Below the pieces are notes generated by a model, which ran no database searches, was not told the origin of the DNA, and saw only the letters and a list, made by a program, of their open reading frames with translations. Both the position numbers and the translations under genes were made by a program. DNA of 63,562 nt, the filler included, from Octopus bimaculoides (Eukaryota), in NCBI RefSeq assembly GCF_001194135.2. It is 5 parts of 5 records of this genome, joined end to end, with 100 filler letters (N's around TTAATTAATTAA, not from the genome) between each part and the next. Parts side by side here need not be neighbours in the genome. Positions count along the whole stretch, not along the records: positions 1 to 30,619 come from NC_068989.1; 4 more parts are not named here. One strand, 5' to 3'. This document shows positions 1 to 21,738 of the stretch, in pieces. How positions within the stretch are numbered: the stretch's first letter is position 1; every line of letters begins with the position of its first letter.

Positions 1-65
1 ATGTAGGTATGTACATACATGTACGTATATATGCATATACTCACATATTATTTGTATTATTATAT
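1..65 (+). repeat. 3' end of an interspersed repeat, partial tandem copy of 725-783
   Basis: 1-59 matches 725-783 with one mismatch and is directly followed by the next unit. Confidence 0.8.
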
Positions 66-789
66 GATGGAACGCACGCGTCCTGTTTGCAAGTAAGTTT
101 TAACTTTATTTTCTGACGCGACTCTATCTATCTTTGTATCTTTCTCCCCCTCTCGTCCCTTCTGTTGGTGTTCGCCTCTCCCCTTCACTACTATTTCTCC
201 CTCTCTCATCCTCCCTGTCTCTCGTTGCTCACCTATGTTCAACGTCCTCCCGTTTTTTCTCTCTCTCTACCACTCTCTCTCCTTACCCCTCGCTGGTCAC
301 ATGTGACCGGCTACTGCTTCCTTTCTTCTCTTGGCCACTGCCAAGCTAGCACGAACTTTCTTCTCTCTCCAGTTCATCACATCACAGCGTTCAGTATACA
401 GATATTTTTTCATGTCTGGCCTAACAGCTCTTCTTGTTTATTTTCACTGTTTCATTCTCCTGTCATGTTTTTTGTTTGCCACTTAATTCCTCCGCATTAC
501 AAATCTAATTTAATTTAATTTGTTTCCGCGTGGAGAACTATTCTAACCATGCATCTTGCCCTAATTCTTCGAAACGCTTAGTTTAGAATAGGGACAGCTG
601 ATGAAGGAAATATTCTCTATGTGGCCTGTTTGTTTTCTGTGCTCTGTTTATGTTCTGTTTTACATTTTGTCCACGTTATTTTGTGACATCCTGTACCCAG
701 ATATGCATCTATATATACATGTAGATGTAGGTATGTACATACATGTACGTATATATGCATATACTCACATATTGTTTGTATTATATATA
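66..789 (+). mobile_element. Non-coding interspersed repeat carrying a permuted hammerhead motif; possibly Penelope pLTR or retrozyme-like
   Basis: ~310-789 is homologous to the reverse complement of 7438-7895. The partial-tandem arrangement with 1-65 and the HHR boxes at 551-610 support the call. Class assignment is inference. Confidence 0.5.
551..610 (+). ncRNA. Permuted-order hammerhead-like motif, partly decayed
   Basis: GCAU-C / UUGCCC / UAAU / UCUUC-GAA-ACGC / 13 nt / GGGACAG-CUGAUGA-A-GGAAA. Confidence 0.55.
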
Positions 790-6259: not shown

Positions 6260-6310
<51 letters not shown>

Positions 6311-7202
6311 NNNNNNNNNNNNNNNNNNNNNNNNNNNNNNNNNNNNNNNNNNNNNNNNNNNNNNNNNNNNNNNNNNNNNNNNNNNNNNNNNNNNNNNNNN
6401 NNNNNNNNNNNNNNNNNNNNNNNNNNNNNNNNNNNNNNNNNNNNNNNNNNNNNNNNNNNNNNNNNNNNNNNNNNNNNNNNNNNNNNNNNNNNNNNNNNNN
6501 NNNNNNNNNNNNNNNNNNNNNNNNNNNNNNNNNNNNNNNNNNNNNNNNNNNNNNNNNNNNNNNNNNNNNNNNNNNNNNNNNNNNNNNNNNNNNNNNNNNN
6601 NNNNNNNNNNNNNNNNNNNNNNNNNNNNNNNNNNNNNNNNNNNNNNNNNNNNNTATATATATATACTTCACACGATATTTGCGATATTTAAGAAGCCTCT
6701 TATCTGTTTTGTGATACTACAGTTAATGGCATTTCAATCAATCAATTACGAACGTACCTAGCACGGTTGTCATAATTCGAACCTTCTACATTAACTGTCA
6801 TAGTGTTGAATAATGATTTCTGGTGCATAGAACTAGACGTGATCTCGTCGTTGAACCCTTTTAGGAATTGTAGTTATTTCCTTCTATATAGTAGCATACC
6901 TTGATGGTAGGATCCTATTCGGAAGTCACAAGTATTTTTCATTCCACTCTATATTATGTATATGCATTATGAATGTAGTTTTATATAATTTACCGCTAAT
7001 CCAGCTGTGCAAGCCTAGGTTAGGTGATGTAACACACAAAAGTTGACTCACAGCTCGGTTTCAAGCAGTTATTACATGTCAAGGAATCCGTTTGAATGCA
7101 AATTCCGATTGTGGAGATTTTAGTATTTCATAGTTTCGGATCAAACACACACACACATAGAAGCATGTACATTTACATGCATATGTAATATATGCGTACA
7201 TT

Positions 7203-7234
<32 letters not shown>

Positions 7235-7437
7235 NNNNNNNNNNNNNNNNNNNNNNNNNNNNNNNNNNNNNNNNNNNNNNNNNNNNNNNNNNNNNNNNNN
7301 NNNNNNNNNNNNNNNNNNNNNNNNNNNNNNNNNNNNNNNNNNNNNNNNNNNNNNNNNNNNNNNNNNNNNNNNNNNNNNNNNNNNNNNNNNNNNNNNNNNN
7401 NNNNNNNNNNNNNNNNNNNNNNNNNNNNNNNNNNNNN

Positions 7438-7895
7438 TATATATAAACAATATATGAGTATATGCATATATATGTACATGTATGTACATACCTTCATCTA
7501 CATGTACACATAGATACATAACTGAGTACATGACGTGGCAAAAGAACATGGACAAAATGATAAACAGGGTACAACAAACAAGTAAGCCGGATAGAAACAT
7601 CTCCTTCATCAGCTGCCACCATTAAAACACCGGCGTTTCGAAGAATTAAGGCAGTACGCATCGTTGAAATGGTTCTTCCCACGAACACAAATTAAATCAT
7701 TTTCATGGAGGATAGTGGCGGACGGAAAACAAGACAGGAAAACGAAACGGTGAATAAACAAACAAACAAAAAGGCTGTACAGCCAGACGTGAAGTGTGTA
7801 TGTATTGAACGCTGTGAAACACGTACAGGAGGGGCAAAGAAGTACGTGCGAGCTTGGTGATTCCAAGAACGAAAAGAAATAGCAGCCGTTACATA
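7438..7895 (-). mobile_element. Diverged second copy of the 66-789 repeat family
   Basis: The reverse complement aligns by eye with ~310-789, including TTCTTCGAAACG...CAGCTGATGAAGGA and the ATGTAG...GTACATACATGTAC tail. Confidence 0.75.
7600..7659 (-). ncRNA. Permuted-order hammerhead-like motif with intact core and all three stems
   Basis: Minus strand: GCGU-A / CUGCC / UUAAU / UCUUC-GAA-ACGC / 15 nt / GGCAG-CUGAUGA-A-GGAGA. Confidence 0.65.
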
Positions 7896-8024
7896 AACAG
7901 AAATTATGTATTATGTAATATTGCATAATAATAAAACTAAACACCTTCATTTCGTCAGATGTCATGTGAAACCATCAGTTTTCTCATGGAAAATATCGTC
8001 TGATAACTTGACATCTTCATTCTT

Positions 8025-9222: not shown

Positions 9223-9676
9223 TTGGCTGATAGGTGGAAACAAAAATTTCTGCATGGCAAATATGTGGCTCATAGCAAACACGCAGATGTAGACCAGAAG
9301 CACACCCATCAGTGGCAACGGAGCCTAGGGCTAAAGGCAGTGAGTGAAGGCTTTATCTTGGCTGCCCAAGATCAGAGCTTCTTGACCTGGAACTATCAAG
9401 CTAATGTAATGAAAAATGGTGTAGACCTAAAGCGTCGATACTGCAATGATGGGATAGAAACAGTCGACCACCTAATCTCTGGATGTAAGGTTTCAGCACC
9501 AGTAGAGTCATGAGACTCTACAGGTACTGACTCTACAGGTACTGACTCTACAAGCGAGACATGACAGAGATGGCCACTATCTACACTGGATAACGTGTCG
9601 GCATTATAAAATAAAAACTGCTGACAAATGATACAAGCACCACTCTGAGGCTATAACTGAGAGTGAAAATGCAACT
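9223..9676 (+). mobile_element. R4/Dong-like RLE LINE fragment B (different subfamily)
   Basis: WKQKFLHGKY...EGFILAAQDQ...NYQANVMKNG...YCNDGIETVDHLISGC...RHD...LHWITC. Contains an internal 15-bp tandem duplication (GACTCTACAGGTACT) at ~9514-9553. Confidence 0.85.
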
Positions 9677-13016: not shown

Positions 13017-13518
13017 ACTTCTTCCAAAAACGGTAGCGACGTCCTGATAGAGAATTTACAACTGTTTTTAAATAATAGANNNNNNNNNNNNNNNNNNNNN
13101 NNNNNNNNNNNNNNNNNNNNNNNNNNNNNNNNNNNNNNNNNNNNNNNNNNNNNNNNNNNNNNNNNNNNNNNNNNNNNNNNNNNNNNNNNNNNNNNNNNNN
13201 NNNNNNNNNNNNNNNNNNNNNNNNNNNNNNNNNNNNNNNNNNNNNNNNNNNNNNNNNNNNNNNNNNNNNNNNNNNNNNNNNNNNNNNNNNNNNNNNNNNN
13301 NNNNNNNNNNNNNNNNNNNNNNNNNNNNNNNNNNNNNNNNNNNNNNNNNNNNNNNNNNNNNNNNNNNNNNNNNNNNNNNNNNNNNNNNNNNNNNNNNNNN
13401 NNNNNNNNNNNNNNNNNNNNNNNNNNNNNNNNNNNNNNNNNNNNNNNNNNNNNNNNNNNNNNNNNNNNNNNNNNNNNNNNNNNNNNNNNNNNNNNNNNNN
13501 NATATATATATATATACC

Positions 13519-13881
13519 TTTTATTTATTATCTTTTATCTGTTTCAGTCATTGGACTGCGGCCATATTGAGGCATTGCCTTGAATCGACCCCAGTACTTT
13601 TCTATCTGTTTCTTTTGCCAAACCACAAAGTTACGTAAAAACACCAACAAAGGTTGTCAACTAGTGCTGTGAGCGACAAACACAGACACACACATAGAGA
13701 TATATGTACTTATATATACGACGGCCTTCTTTCAGTTTCCGTCTACCAAATCCACTCACAAAGCTTTTGTCAGCCCGAGGCTATAGTAGAAGGCATTTGC
13801 TTAAGTTGCCACACAGTGGAGCTGAACCCGGAACCACGTGGTCTGGAAGCAAGCTCCTTACCACACAGCCACTCCTGCGCC
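13519..13881 (-). mobile_element. tRNA-derived SINE, family 1, near full length
   Basis: Minus-strand head GCGCAGGAGTGGCTGTGTGGTAAG...GGTTCCGGGTTCAG, central microsatellite, tail CAGTCCAATGACTGAAACAG. Homologous to 58778-59118. Confidence 0.85.
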
Positions 13882-14764: not shown

Positions 14765-15365
14765 CCGCATATCTCGGTAGTTTACGCGAAACTTGTTTTA
14801 TTCCGTTAATATTCACATTTCAATGGTACCGTACTTTCAAAGTATCTTCCCATTATGCGCCAGTTTGGCTGTATTAAATTACAGAGTAGAACGCACACAA
14901 ACAAACACGCAAGCAAACAATCATAAAGGTGCCCGGAAAAAACGCGTATCTCGTGAACTCGTGGTCCGATTTACGCGAAATTTGTCTTATTCCGTTTGTA
15001 TTCCATTTCAGAGTATTCTCCCCTTTTGGCGCCGGTTTGGCTGTATTAAATTACAGACGAGCACGCATGCAAGCAAGCACGCAAACAAAACTATCCAGGT
15101 GTTCACAGTAAAGGACAAAACCTCCAGATTTCACTGCTTAAATTTGTGGAAACAAAACCAAAACAAACGTGCATCTCAGAATCCGTGGTCCGATTTACGC
15201 GAAACTTGTTTTATTGTACTTGTATTCACATTTCAGGGATACCTTACTTTCAGAGTATTTTCCAATTATGCGTACGTTTGGCTATATCAAATTACAGACA
15301 AGCACGCCAGCGAGCAAGTACGCAAGCAAGTACGCAAGCAGGCACTCAGGGAGTTTTAGTAGTAT
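14765..15365 (+). repeat. Three diverged ~150-190 bp direct repeats
   Basis: Each unit carries TTTACGCGAAA(C/T)TTGT...TTTGGCT(G/A)TAT..AAATTACAGA followed by a (GCAA) run. Confidence 0.8.
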
Positions 15366-15466: not shown

Positions 15467-16821
15467 TTGGGTTGGCAACTAAGTTTCCGCCGTTTTTTTT
15501 TTTAAATTTTAGAATTTATTGCGTTTTTAAATTTTGGAATCTATTTTTTTCGAGAATTGTATTTTTGAATCTTTTTTTTTTTTCTAGTTAATTTTAGTTA
15601 TATTTTGTTTATTTTGAGATCATTAAAATGGAATGTCAAGTTAAGAAAAAGGAGCATTTTCGACACCTTTTTGCTTTTAATCAAGGTTCTAAGGCCGCAA
15701 AAGCTGTTCGCGACGTTTGTGCTGTGTATGGAGAGGGTGCCATAGCTGAAAGAACCACTCGTGATTGGTATGCCAAGTTCAAAAATGGAANNNNNNNNNN
15801 NNNNNNNNNNNNNNNNNNNNNNNNNNNNNNNNNNNNNNNNNNNNNNNNNNNNNNNNNNNNNNNNNNNNNNNNNNNNNNNNNNNNNNNNNNNNNNNNNNNN
15901 NNNNNNNNNNNNNNNNNNNNNNNNNNNNNNNNNNNNNNNNNNNNNNNNNNNNNNNNNNNNNNNNNNNNNNNNNNNNNNNNNNNNNNNNNNNNNNNNNNNN
16001 NNNNNNNNNNNNNNNNNNNNNNNNNNNNNNNNNNNNNNNNNNNNNNNNNNNNNNNNNNNNNNNNNNNNNNNNNNNNNNNNNNNNNNNNNNNNNNNNCTTT
16101 AAGTGACAACAACAAAAATCAACGAGCCACAATCTCCGCTGGTTTGCTTGTTCGTCACCGCTTGACTCATGGACACAAGCAACGATTTCATTACAGAATC
16201 GTTACTGGCGACGAAAAATGGTGCCTGTACATCAATATGAAGCAGGGTAAGGAATGGCTTAACCCCGGTAAACAAGCGACACCGCGCGTGAAACAAGATC
16301 TTCATCCGCGTAAAACGATGTTGTGCGTATGGTGCGACTGGGAAGGGATTATCCATTACGAATTGTTTGAACGGAACCAAACGGTCAACGCGGAACTCTA
16401 TGTTCGACAGATGGAACGACTCAACGCTGCTATTCAAGAAAAAAGACCTAATCGGCAGCCCGCCCTCATATCGCCAATATGACCAAGTAAGCCATTGAAG
16501 CGCATGACTGGGATGTGCTGCCATACCCGCCGTACTCTCCTGATTTGGTACGAACAGATTTCCACCTCTTTCGATCTCTTTCAAGTGCTATGCACGGAGT
16601 TTCATTCAATACTGATGCAGAATTGAGAGTTTAGATGGATCAATTTTTCGAATCGAAATCGGGAGATTTCTACCAACGAGGTATTGAAAATCTTGTTGAA
16701 CGTTGAGAAGTTGTAAACAACAAAGGTGAATACATTATTGATTAATTAGTTGTCATTTTTTATCAAACCTTAAAAAAAATTCAAATTTTAAAAAACGGCG
16801 GGAATTTAGTTGCCAACCCAA
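15467..16821 (+). mobile_element. Full-length mariner transposon (mellifera-like), TIRs intact, TA target duplication
   Basis: TIR TTGGGTTGGCAACTAA...CCGCCGTTTTTT at both ends, flanked by TA at 15465-66 and 16822-23. Confidence 0.92.
15628..16745 (+). pseudogene. Mariner DD34D transposase, frameshifted
   Basis: MECQVKKKEHFRHLF...; IVTGDEKW; MLCVWCDWEGIIHYE; PYPPYSPDL..TDFHLFRS. It spans a gap and the HDN motif is deleted. Confidence 0.9.
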
Positions 16822-17440
16822 TATACATATTTGTATTTGTGTGTGTGTGTGTGTGTGTGTGTNNNNNNNNNNNNNNNNNNNNNNNNNNNNNNNNNNNNNN
16901 NNNNNNNNNNNNNNNNNNNNNNNNNNNNNNNNNNNNNNNNNNNNNNNNNNNNNNNNNNNNNNNNNNNNNNNNNNNNNNNNNNNNNNNNNNNNNNNNNNNN
17001 NNNNNNNNNNNNNNNNNNNNNNNNNNNNNNNNNNNNNNNNNNNNNNNNNNNNNNNNNNNNNNNNNNNNNNNNNNNNNNNNNNNNNNNNNNNNNNNNNNNN
17101 NNNNNNNNNNNNNNNNNNNNNNNNNNNNNNNNNNNNNNNNNNNNNNNNNNNNNNNNNNNNNNNNNNNNNNNNNNNNNNNNNNNNNNNNNNNNNNNNNNNN
17201 NNNNNNNNNNNNNNNNNNNNNNNNNNNNNNNNNNNNNNNNNNNNNNNNNNNNNNNNNNNNNNNNNNNNNNNNNNNNNNNNNNNNNNNNNNNNNNNNNNNN
17301 NNNNNNNNNNNNNNNNNNNNNNNNNNNNNNNNNNNNNNNNNNNNNNNNNNNNNNNNNNNNNNNNNNNNNNNNNNNNNNNNNNNNNNNNNNNNNNNNNNNN
17401 NNNNNNNNNNNNNNNNNNNNNNNNNNNNNNNNNNNNNNNN

Positions 17441-20295: not shown

Positions 20296-20350
<55 letters not shown>

Positions 20351-20740
20351 NNNNNNNNNNNNNNNNNNNNNNNNNNNNNNNNNNNNNNNNNNNNNNNNNN
20401 NNNNNNNNNNNNNNNNNNNNNNNNNNNNNNNNNNNNNNNNNNNNNNNNNNNNNNNNNNNNNNNNNNNNNNNNNNNNNNNNNNNNNNNNNNNNNNNNNNNN
20501 NNNNNNNNNNNNNNNNNNNNNNNNNNNNNNNNNNNNNNNNNNNNNNNNNNNNNNNNNNNNNNNNNNNNNNNNNNNNNNNNNNNNNNNNNNNNNNNNNNNN
20601 NNNNNNNNNNNNNNNNNNNNNNNNNNNNNNNNNNNNNNNNNNNNNNNNNNNNNNNNNNNNNNNNNNNNNNNNNNNNNNNNNNNNNNNNNNNNNNNNNNNN
20701 NNNNNNNNNNNNNNNNNNNNNNNNNNNNNNNNNNNAAACT

Positions 20741-20785
20741 ACATTCCTCAAAATTTCAGGCCTTGTGCCTCATCAGAAAGGATAT
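20741..20785 (-). ncRNA. Minimal type I hammerhead relic
   Basis: AUAUCCUUU-CUGAUGA-GGC ACAAG GCC-U-GAAAUUUU-GAGGAAUGU. Confidence 0.45.
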
Positions 20786-21572: not shown

Positions 21573-21738
21573 AAGGGCACAGTGGGTGCCATTCCTATAC
21601 GCTGAAAATAGACGCTAAATCCTCGAACCATTCTAAATCATCAATTTTATAATACATACGTTGAAAGCAATGATTTAGAGTTGTTCGACGACTTAGCGTC
21701 TATTTTCAGCGTATAAGCATGGTATCCTCTGTGCCCTT
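21573..21738. repeat. 166-bp imperfect palindrome (MITE-like)
   Basis: Arms of ~70 bp including TATACGCTGAAAATAGACGCTAA / TTAGCGTCTATTTTCAGCGTATA. Confidence 0.85.

What the first reader, a model, noticed from the sequence alone, without database searches (positions are those of the whole stretch)
7600..7659. Complete hammerhead ribozyme parts in reverse strand order (non-I/II/III permutation)
Seen on the minus strand: GCGU-A | CUGCC | UUAAU | UCUUC-GAA-ACGC | 15 nt | GGCAG-CUGAUGA-A-GGAGA. Stem III is ACGC/GCGU with a GUA cleavage triplet, stem I is CUGCC/GGCAG, and stem II is GGAGA/UCUUC. All core nucleotides are intact, with one extra A after the box, as also seen in the canonical-order relics here. 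Established: hammerhead types I, II and III are circular permutations of the order CUGAUGA-strand, GAAA-strand, NUH-strand. Here the order is NUH, GAAA, CUGAUGA, which no circular permutation gives. Inference: the NUH and GAAA strands close a hairpin via stem III, and the CUGAUGA strand pairs twice into its ~19-nt loop. The 5-nt linker would tie the distal ends of stems I and II, which are neighbours in the active fold. I do not recall this topology being described, but I could not search the literature.
Basis: partly seen in the sequence, partly recalled or inferred. Interest (0 to 1): 0.88.

Follow-up and report, generated by a model that had tools for sequence, protein, structure and literature searches.

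The report
Permuted hammerhead look-alike in octopus repeat

Summary
Observation confirmed. Minus strand 7659-7600 reads GCGUA|CUGCC-UUAAU-UCUUC-GAA-ACGC-(15 nt)-GGCAG-CUGAUGA-A-GGAGA: a complete hammerhead core with stems I/II/III of 5/5/4 bp.

The novelty claim fails. This strand order is the "type-SGC" hammerhead of Eckert et al. (NAR 2023, PMC10085705), validated in vitro. Validated examples also have 5-bp stem II, a short stem I-to-II linker and one extra nucleotide after CUGAUGA.

Whether this instance is a ribozyme is unproven, and I judge it unlikely (about 0.2).
- It lies on the sense strand of a ~480-nt, microsatellite-tailed, 5'-truncating retroposon of an octopus genome.
- The second full copy in the window breaks one pair in each stem, with no compensation.
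- An O. bimaculoides relative keeps UUCGAAA and CUGAUGAAGG but not stems I and III.
- The fourth helix, required in SGC-3, is absent.
- Competing pairings are as stable or better conserved.
- Matches of this quality are expected by chance at about 5e-4 per window, or about 17 per Gb.

If real, it would be the first type-SGC hammerhead in a cellular DNA genome. All family copies from the octopus assembly plus a cleavage assay would decide.

The parts
7650..7659 (-). Block S: stem III 3' strand GCGU (7659-7656, U16.1 at 7656), H17 = A7655 (predicted cleavage between 7655 and 7654), stem I 5' strand CUGCC (7654-7650)
7645..7649 (-). 5-nt linker UUAAU joining the distal end of stem I to the distal end of stem II (typically 3 nt in published type-SGC ribozymes)
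7633..7644 (-). Block G: stem II 3' strand UCUUC (7644-7640), G12A13A14 (7639-7637), stem III 5' strand ACGC (7636-7633). It lies in a 16-nt run identical in copies A and B
7618..7632 (-). 15-nt G-to-C linker CGGUGUUUUAAUGGU. It is poorly conserved (about 10 of 15 positions differ in copy B). It can pair with the 5' flank 7662-7673 to extend stem III into a long hairpin that excludes stem I
7600..7617 (-). Block C: stem I 3' strand GGCAG (7617-7613), CUGAUGA (7612-7606), inserted A (7605), stem II 5' strand GGAGA (7604-7600)
7662..7673 (-). 5' flank ACCAUUUCAACG, which pairs with the G-to-C linker (competing extended hairpin). Two compensatory changes between copies A and B, not significant
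7439..7898 (-). Retroposon copy A (~460 nt, sense = minus strand), ending in a TA-rich microsatellite and an assembly gap. It carries the intact motif and has 19 CpG against 10 in copy B, so it is less decayed
297..781 (+). Retroposon copy B, 75% identical to A. The homologous motif is at 551-610, with the same core blocks but one broken pair in each stem (stem III C-A, stem I C-A, stem II A-C)
1..57 (+). 3' tail of a third copy, cut by the edge of the piece (98% identical to the tail of copy B)

Best explanation
The 60 nt are part of the sense strand of an old, ~480-nt non-LTR-type retroposon of an octopus genome. The family shows 5'-truncated copies and a TA/TG microsatellite tail. By sequence, this copy carries the three hammerhead strand blocks in the order S-G-C, which is the published type-SGC permutation.

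I consider it most likely a fortuitous, unselected match. The family carries two conserved strings, UUCGAAAC and CUGAUGAAGG, for unknown reasons. In the lineage of copy A the neighbouring bases happen to complete stems I, II and III. Retroposition then copied the arrangement and neutral decay erodes it.

Shown: the parts, the repeat membership, the lack of covariation and the missing fourth helix. Inferred: that it is not a selected ribozyme. If transcribed, copy A might still cleave weakly after A7655 in vitro, because the core is complete.
For: (1) Chance rate: 8.8e-5 per CUGAUGA box, about 17 per Gb, so such matches are expected in an octopus-sized genome.
(2) Three family members span the region and only copy A can form the helices. 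Copy B breaks one pair in each of the three stems with no compensatory change. The stem II mismatch (GGAAA) is shared by the independent 5'-truncated copy L003:17146-17263, so it is a subfamily state rather than private decay. The diverged relative L004:7786-7946 keeps UUCGAAA and CUGAUGAAGG but has no stem I or III.
(3) The fourth helix flanking block C, required for cleavage in SGC-3, is absent. The best duplex is -3.6 kcal/mol and 65% of shuffles do as well, against -9.2 and -7.5 in SGC-1 and SGC-3.
(4) The summed stacking of the hammerhead helices exceeds the best nested fold by only 7-9 kcal/mol before loop penalties, against 14-20 in the validated ribozymes.
(5) Competing pairings exist. 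UUCUUCG/UGAAGGA (-9.2 kcal/mol stacking, invariant in both copies) sequesters G12 and part of the box. A flank/linker extension of stem III carries the only two compensatory changes seen.
(6) The region is not unusually structured: z = +0.9.
(7) There is no Rfam hit.
(8) Eckert et al. searched RefSeq with SGC descriptors and found no such RNA in genomes of known organisms.
Against: The match is complete and detailed. Every core nucleotide is standard. Stems I and II are both 5 bp, the I-to-II linker is short, and there is one inserted nucleotide after CUGAUGA. Validated SGC-1 and SGC-3 share these features: both have a 5-bp stem II, a short I-to-II linker and one inserted nucleotide after the box.

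For this one window, p is about 1e-4 to 5e-4.

The motif lies on the sense strand of a retroelement, a context where canonical hammerheads are common.

Between copies A and B the 40 functional positions differ less (5/40, p=0.037) and the linkers differ more (10/20, p=0.012) than the repeat average.

Copy B's stem changes are all G>A or C>U, one at a CpG, and A keeps twice as many CpGs. The intact state may therefore be ancestral, and B's defects may be post-insertion decay, which says nothing about the master copy.

A descriptor-only single hit (GCS-1) did cleave in vitro in the 2023 paper.
Confidence: 0.65

Rival explanations
1. It is a genuine type-SGC hammerhead ribozyme carried by the master copies of this octopus retroposon family. 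The transcript folds with stem III closing a 19-nt loop. The CUGAUGA strand pairs twice into that loop to form stems I and II, and the 5-nt linker holds the two stems side by side. The RNA then cleaves itself after A7655. Copy B, L003 and L004 are decayed or divergent copies.
For: The core is complete and the architecture falls within the range of validated SGC ribozymes, including the extra nucleotide after the box. An extra A10 and a GUA triplet both occur in active natural hammerheads. The per-window chance probability is low. The motif is on the sense strand of a retroelement. Conservation of the blocks against the linkers shows weak signals. CpG and transition patterns suggest that copy A is closest to the ancestor. 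Eukaryotic retroelements often carry hammerheads, and some Naiad Penelope-like elements have hammerhead cores that fit no canonical descriptor.
Against: There is no covariation, and one pair per stem is broken in copy B. The stem II mismatch is shared at subfamily level with L003. The helices are absent in L004. There is no fourth helix. Stability is marginal and misfolds compete. Cleavage about 215 nt upstream of the 3' tail would separate the body from the end needed for target-primed reverse transcription. Type-SGC ribozymes are so far known only from metatranscriptomic RNA replicons.
Confidence: 0.22
2. The conserved blocks belong to another functional element of the retroposon's 3' region, and the hammerhead resemblance is incidental. 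One candidate is a long hairpin formed by the 5' flank and the G-to-C linker together with stem III, of the kind reverse transcriptases recognise in LINE/SINE 3' ends. Another is a degenerate tRNA T-arm or B-box-like string (compare GGUUUCGAAAU in L004).
For: The extended hairpin is 84% paired in both copies, against 31-44% when the partner is slid, and it holds the only two compensatory changes seen (C-G to U-A, and G-U to C-G). It is part of the MFE fold of copy A. UUCGAAA and CUGAUGAAGG persist in L004 without the hammerhead helices.
Against: With two sequences the covariation is not significant (129 of 500 shuffles reach it). RNAalifold prefers yet another pairing, and the consensus energy is weak at -7.25 kcal/mol. 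Copy B's MFE fold is different. The B-box resemblance is loose, and ARAGORN sees no tRNA-like gene.
Confidence: 0.13

Closest known systems
Type-SGC hammerhead ribozymes (HRIMA-1 motif and type-SGC variants; Eckert, Friedrich, Weinberg & Weinberg, Nucleic Acids Res 2023, PMC10085705)
   Same: The block order S-G-C is identical and all core nucleotides match. Stem II is 5 bp as in the published examples, and stem I is 5 bp as in the HRIMA-1 motif. A short linker runs from stem I directly into stem II. One inserted nucleotide follows CUGAUGA (U in the published examples, A here). Stem III closes a loop that is paired twice by block C.
   Different: There is no fourth helix flanking block C. The linker is 5 nt rather than 2-4. 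Stem I does not have the conserved AUGUU/AACAU sequence. There is no covariation. The motif is encoded in a eukaryotic DNA genome within a retroposon, whereas published examples come from metatranscriptomes and are associated with hairpin ribozymes of presumed circular RNA replicons. It is untested biochemically.
Canonical hammerheads of eukaryotic retroelements (type I in animal retrozymes, Sm-alpha SINEs and Penelope-like elements)
   Same: A hammerhead core on the sense strand of a repetitive retroelement in an invertebrate genome.
   Different: The strand order is not a circular permutation of the canonical one. No Rfam hammerhead model matches. There is no tandem or pLTR arrangement with a ribozyme in each unit. 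No Penelope-like element protein was seen next to the copies.
Hammerhead 'core without canonical stems' noted in Naiad Penelope-like elements (Craig et al., Mol Biol Evol 2021, PMC8557442)
   Same: Elements associated with (TA)n microsatellites, present in cephalopods only as old remnants. Some carry CUGANGA and GAAA strings that fit no canonical descriptor, and in some the second half lies on either side of the first.
   Different: This is only a lead. I found no Naiad reverse transcriptase or GIY-YIG sequence near the copies. The consensus sequences in that paper's supplement were not available. The family here looks like a short 5'-truncating retroposon.
CChMVd (+) hammerhead with extra A10
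   Same: An extra A between A9 and G10.1 is tolerated with only a moderate loss of rate. GUA triplets occur in natural hammerheads.
   Different: That ribozyme is a canonical type III hammerhead of a viroid, with loop-loop tertiary contacts.

Membership tests
Type-SGC hammerhead ribozyme (Eckert et al. 2023) | Blocks in the 5'-3' order S (cleavage site), G (GAAA), C (CUGAnGA) | tested here: met
   The same descriptor recovers validated SGC-1 and SGC-3.
Type-SGC hammerhead ribozyme (Eckert et al. 2023) | All highly conserved core nucleotides: CUGAnGA, GAAA, the A15.1-U16.1 pair, and H17 not G | tested here: met
   CUGAUGA 7612-7606, GAA-A 7639-7636, U7656, A7655. The core strings are also intact in copy B.
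Type-SGC hammerhead ribozyme (Eckert et al. 2023) | Stems I, II and III can form | tested here: met
   Copy A: 5, 5 (one G-U) and 4 bp, with duplex energies comparable to SGC-1 and SGC-3 except for a weak stem II. Copy B has one mismatch in each stem.
Type-SGC hammerhead ribozyme (Eckert et al. 2023) | Short linker (typically 3 nt) from stem I directly into stem II | tested here: inconclusive
   5 nt here, against 2-4 nt in the published alignment. Close, but outside the observed range.
Type-SGC hammerhead ribozyme (Eckert et al. 2023) | At most one or two inserted nucleotides between CUGAnGA and stem II | tested here: met
   One A (7605). Published SGC sequences have one U at the same place.
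Type-SGC hammerhead ribozyme (Eckert et al. 2023) | Fourth helix joining the other sides of stems I and II (flanking block C); required for cleavage in SGC-3 | tested here: not met
   The best duplex between the G-to-C linker and the 3' flank is -3.6 kcal/mol, and 65% of shuffles do as well. SGC-1 gives -9.2 and SGC-3 gives -7.5.
Type-SGC hammerhead ribozyme (Eckert et al. 2023) | Covariation supporting stems I-III across homologues | tested here: not met
   0 compensatory changes and 3 of 14 pairs broken in copy B. L004 lacks stems I and III, and L003 is truncated. Only three informative sequences were available.
Type-SGC hammerhead ribozyme (Eckert et al. 2023) | Site-specific self-cleavage abolished by mutation of G5 | not testable with these tools
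   Requires in vitro transcription and cleavage assays.
Type-SGC hammerhead ribozyme (Eckert et al. 2023) | Context: RNA-only (metatranscriptome) replicons associated with hairpin ribozymes | tested here: not met
   The motif is in a eukaryotic genomic repeat: mariner and LINE relics in the window and family members in O. bimaculoides chromosomes. The paper found none in genomes of known organisms. Context does not define the fold.
Canonical hammerhead (types I/II/III; Rfam Hammerhead families) | Strand order that is a circular permutation of C-G-S, with a match to an Rfam covariance model | tested here: not met
   The order is S-G-C. There is no Rfam match at gathering score, or at E<=10, in the whole piece or in a 181-nt sub-window.
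Retrozyme / Penelope-like-element hammerhead | Ribozyme in tandem units or pseudo-LTRs of the element, adjacent to a Penelope-like element RT/GIY-YIG gene or within short tandem repeats | tested here: not met
   Copies are dispersed (297-781 +, 7439-7898 -). Only a tail fragment lies 240 nt upstream of copy B. The RT relics in the window are LINE-type zf-RVT.

The most novel reading that the evidence does not exclude
This is the first non-circularly permuted (type-SGC) hammerhead ribozyme encoded in a cellular DNA genome. It would be carried by an octopus retroposon family and active in the master copies. That would show that permuted hammerheads are not confined to RNA replicons. It would also suggest that the 'hammerhead cores without canonical stems' seen in some invertebrate retroelements may be unrecognised permuted ribozymes.
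Probability: 0.2. Interest if true: 0.6.

Novelty: new member of a known kind. Interest (0 to 1): 0.3.

Why it matters
As claimed (a new hammerhead topology), it does not matter: the topology was published and validated in 2023.

If this instance proved active and selected, it would extend type-SGC hammerheads from environmental RNA replicons to an animal genome and to retroelements. It would also justify re-screening eukaryotic repeats with permuted descriptors, because all large eukaryotic hammerhead surveys I know of (my own knowledge, not tested here) used canonical strand orders.

If it is a chance match, as I think more likely, it is a useful calibration. In a Gb-sized AT-rich genome, complete S-G-C hammerhead look-alikes with 5/5/4-bp stems are expected about ten or more times. 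Descriptor hits therefore need covariation or biochemistry before they can be trusted.

Tried and rejected
1. Rfam 15 at gathering score, at E<=10 on the whole piece and on a 181-nt sub-window gave no hammerhead or other credible family; only microsatellite-driven sub-threshold miRNA hits appeared.

2. I tried to collect more copies of the repeat.
- A protein-database search with the spurious 118-aa ORF across the repeat found nothing.
- Exact-pattern scans of metagenome, viral and prokaryote-genome contigs with two different family patterns found nothing.
- nhmmer within the piece found only copies A and B and one tail.
- An LINE-RT query gave hits of at most 60% identity, from another organism (ENA ERZ25878469), and those loci hold no copy.
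- A mariner query led to two O. bimaculoides loci holding one truncated and one diverged family member. Three other loci (TARA scaffold, ERZ22157276) hold none.
- A look-up of a window ORF to extend the piece failed.

3. I looked for the 'canonical-order relics'. The other four CUGAUGA boxes outside the repeat family show nothing convincing. The one at 20776(-) reads CUGAUGA-GGC-ACAA-GCC-U-GAAAU next to an assembly gap and is probably chance.

4. I considered a fourth helix from AUGG/CUAU plus CCGG/CCGG by eye and rejected it, because it is no better than shuffles.

5. I considered a tandem (retrozyme-like) arrangement because a tail copy lies 724 nt upstream of copy B's tail. I rejected it because the 236-nt spacer has no counterpart upstream of copy A.

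6. I considered Naiad Penelope-like element ancestry because of the (TA)n association. It remains only a lead, since no Penelope-like element protein was seen nearby and the paper's supplement is not held.

7. I did not build a covariance model from the published SGC alignment. All three stems cross one another, and the published model would be dominated by a stem I sequence that is absent here.

Full report
**1. What is in the sequence**

On the minus strand, 7659 to 7600 reads GCGUA CUGCC UUAAU UCUUC GAA ACGC CGGUGUUUUAAUGGU GGCAG CUGAUGA A GGAGA. I wrote a descriptor requiring:
- a CUGAUGA box with 0-1 inserted nucleotide;
- an upstream GAAA whose 5' neighbour pairs with the bases after the box;
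- further upstream, a UH site whose flanks pair with the bases after GAA and before the box.

It finds exactly one hit in the 30.6-kb piece, this one, with stems I/II/III of 5/5/4 bp, one G-U pair and one inserted A. All core positions are standard: C3-A9, G12-A14, A15.1-U16.1, H17 = A7655, G10.1-C11.1.

**2. Is it more than chance?**

CUGAUGA is not enriched: 6 found against 4.3 expected. I simulated 600,000 boxes embedded in first-order Markov sequence of the window's composition. The results per box were:

| Match quality | Probability per box |
|---|---|
| Stems >=5,5,4 (quality seen here) | 8.8e-5 |
| Same, with stem I-to-II linker <=8 nt | 1.7e-5 |
| Stems 4,4,3 | 1.1e-3 |

Two 20-Mb Markov genomes gave consistent counts. 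With about six boxes per 30 kb, this is about 5e-4 for this window but about 17 per Gb. The match is thus unlikely in any one window, yet expected several times in an octopus-sized genome and in any scan of many windows. Allowing the other two non-circular orders would roughly triple these numbers (inference).

**3. The topology is already known**

- They divide the hammerhead into blocks C (CUGAnGA), G (GAAA) and S (cleavage site). Types I, II and III are CGS, GSC and SCG.
- They describe type SGC, which is exactly the order found here. There are 583 predicted examples.
- Five examples cleaved at the predicted site. G5 mutants were dead. In SGC-3, disruptive and compensatory mutants validated all four helices.
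- They note that one side of stem I runs into one side of stem II through a linker of typically three nucleotides. A fourth helix joins the other sides of stems I and II.
- None was found in genomes of known organisms.

[quoted passage not shown] My descriptor recovers SGC-1 and SGC-3 with the same one-nucleotide insertion. In addition, CChMVd(+) has an extra A10 at this position, and GUA triplets occur in natural hammerheads. No later paper in the library reports type SGC in a eukaryotic genome.

**4. What the motif sits in**

The piece is eukaryotic: N gaps, abundant microsatellites, a Mos1-type mariner relic and LINE zf-RVT relics.

The motif lies in an interspersed repeat. Copy A is at 7439-7898 (minus strand). 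Copy B is at 297-781 (plus strand), 75% identical over 445 columns. The tail of a third copy is at 1-57. Both full copies end in TA-rich microsatellites that broke the assembly.

The mariner relic led to two Octopus bimaculoides proteins and their chromosomal loci in GCA_001194135.2.
- These loci share the mariner at 83-91% nucleotide identity and contain family members.
- L003:17146-17263 is a 5'-truncated copy that starts inside block C and resembles copy B.
- L004:7786-7946 is a diverged relative.

The window is therefore from an octopus genome, probably O. bimaculoides. The family behaves like a 5'-truncating, microsatellite-tailed non-LTR retroposon whose sense strand is the strand carrying the motif (inference from the tail position and the truncation).

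**5. Do the family members support a ribozyme?**

Copy B has the same core strings, but one pair is broken in each stem: C-A in stem III, C-A in stem I and A-C in stem II. There is one C-G to U-G change and no compensatory change. The stem II mismatch (GGAAA) is shared by L003, so it is a subfamily state. L004 keeps UUCGAAA and CUGAUGAAGG but cannot form stems I or III.

In favour of constraint:
- The 40 block positions differ less than average (5/40, p=0.037).
- The 20 linker positions differ more than average (10/20, p=0.012).
- Copy A has 19 CpG against 10 in copy B, and B's stem changes are all G>A or C>U. The intact state may therefore be ancestral.

Against reading much into this, identity runs of 14-20 nt are not unusual at this divergence: P(run>=16) = 0.68. 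With three informative sequences, none of this is decisive.

**6. Can it fold?**
- The fourth helix is absent. The best duplex between the G-to-C linker and the 3' flank is -3.6 kcal/mol, no better than 65% of shuffles. SGC-1 gives -9.2 and SGC-3 gives -7.5.
- Stem II is weak, at -2.7 kcal/mol as a duplex.
- The summed stacking of the hammerhead helices is -25.2 kcal/mol, against nested MFEs of -15.8 and -18.0. In SGC-1 the figures are -36.7 against -22.3, and in SGC-3 they are -33.6 against -13.4. After junction and linker penalties, the hammerhead fold here is unlikely to be the ground state (inference).
- Two competitors exist. The first is a register-shifted helix UUCUUCG/UGAAGGA, invariant in both copies, that sequesters G12 and part of the box. 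The second is an extension of stem III formed by the 5' flank 7662-7673 and the G-to-C linker. It is 84% paired in both copies, against 31-44% when the partner is slid, and it carries the only two compensatory changes seen, though these are not significant.
- That extension ends directly at the first base of the stem I strand, so it cannot coexist with stem I (geometric inference from H-type pseudoknot rules).
- The region as a whole is not unusually structured: z = +0.9.

**7. Verdict**
- Its central novelty claim is wrong, because this is the published type-SGC format.
- Whether this instance is a ribozyme is open. I put about 0.65 on a fortuitous, unselected look-alike fixed in one lineage of an octopus retroposon. 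I put about 0.2 on a genuine type-SGC hammerhead of the family's master copies. I put about 0.13 on the blocks belonging to some other element of the retroposon's 3' region.
- Weak cleavage in vitro is possible under any of these, because the core is complete. The single descriptor hit GCS-1 cleaved in the 2023 study.
- If genuine, it would be the first type-SGC hammerhead in a cellular genome. That would be a new member of a known kind in a new context. It would also link to the remark that some Naiad Penelope-like elements carry hammerhead cores that fit no canonical descriptor (a lead only).
- The decisive steps are an alignment of all family copies from the octopus assembly and a cleavage assay.

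Noticed in passing
window 15628-16482 (+): Relic of a Mos1-type mariner transposase (HTH_48 and Transposase_1 domains) interrupted by an N gap. It is 83-91% identical at nucleotide level to copies in Octopus bimaculoides chromosomes CM046611.1 and CM046615.1 and to a TARA Oceans metagenome scaffold. This is the basis for calling the window octopus.
   Followed up: yes
window 25797-26267 (-), 27097-27456 (-), 9223-9513 (+): C-terminal fragments of non-LTR retrotransposon ORF2. Two of them (25797-26267 and 27097-27456) match the Pfam zinc-binding zf-RVT region, while 9223-9513 resembles them in sequence but has no Pfam match. The best database relatives (tested for 25797-26267 only) are only about 60% identical, and the one named hit is from the coral Oculina patagonica.
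   Followed up: partly
window 13723-13880 (-); also L003:16200-16338 and L004:7375-7520: Head of a tRNA-derived SINE with A/B-box-like strings (GGCTGTGTGGTAAGGAGC ... GGGTTCAGCTCC). In the window copy and in L003 it ends in GAAACTGAAAGAAG.. plus a TA/TG microsatellite; the L004 copy lacks the microsatellite. ARAGORN does not call it a tRNA. It is a different family from the one carrying the motif.
   Followed up: partly
L004:7786-7946 (O. bimaculoides): A diverged relative of the motif-bearing family that keeps GGTTTCGAAAT and CTGATGAAGG about 30 nt apart but has no stems I or III. The first string loosely resembles a tRNA B box (GGTTCGAATCC). This hints that the two 'core' strings are conserved for a reason unrelated to a hammerhead.
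   Followed up: partly
window 20750-20776 (-): CUGAUGA-GGC-ACAA-GCC-U-GAAAU: a canonical-order fragment (box, 3-bp stem II hairpin, GAAA with an extra U) lying directly next to an N gap. There is no Rfam support and it is probably chance.
   Followed up: partly
window 21599-21712: A 114-nt near-perfect palindrome (long hairpin) that scores sub-threshold to the mir-2513 model on both strands. It looks like a MITE-type inverted repeat.
   Followed up: no
window 14781-15329 (+): Three direct copies of a ~136-nt unit (60-79% identical, start-to-start spacing 172 and 241 nt) inside a 188-aa ORF with no Pfam match.
   Followed up: no
window 24272-24393 and 26190-26311 (+): A 122-nt direct repeat (86% identical), 1.9 kb apart. 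Each copy lies next to long (ATT)n/(CTA)n arrays and near the RT relic at 25797-26267. This suggests a duplicated retroelement end.
   Followed up: no
window 1-57 and 725-781 (+): The tails of two copies of the motif-bearing family are 98% identical and 724 nt apart in the same orientation. This is far more similar than copies A and B (75%), and suggests a local duplication or a young subfamily. The upstream copy's motif region lies outside the piece.
   Followed up: partly
window, many sites (e.g. 790-888, 6310-6665, 7235-7437, 13294-13516, 16860-17440, 20350-20740, 22585-22870, 28530-28980): Assembly gaps (N runs) are almost always bounded by TA, TG or CT microsatellites. Repeat ends and any tandem structure next to them are therefore unreliable in this assembly.
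   Followed up: no
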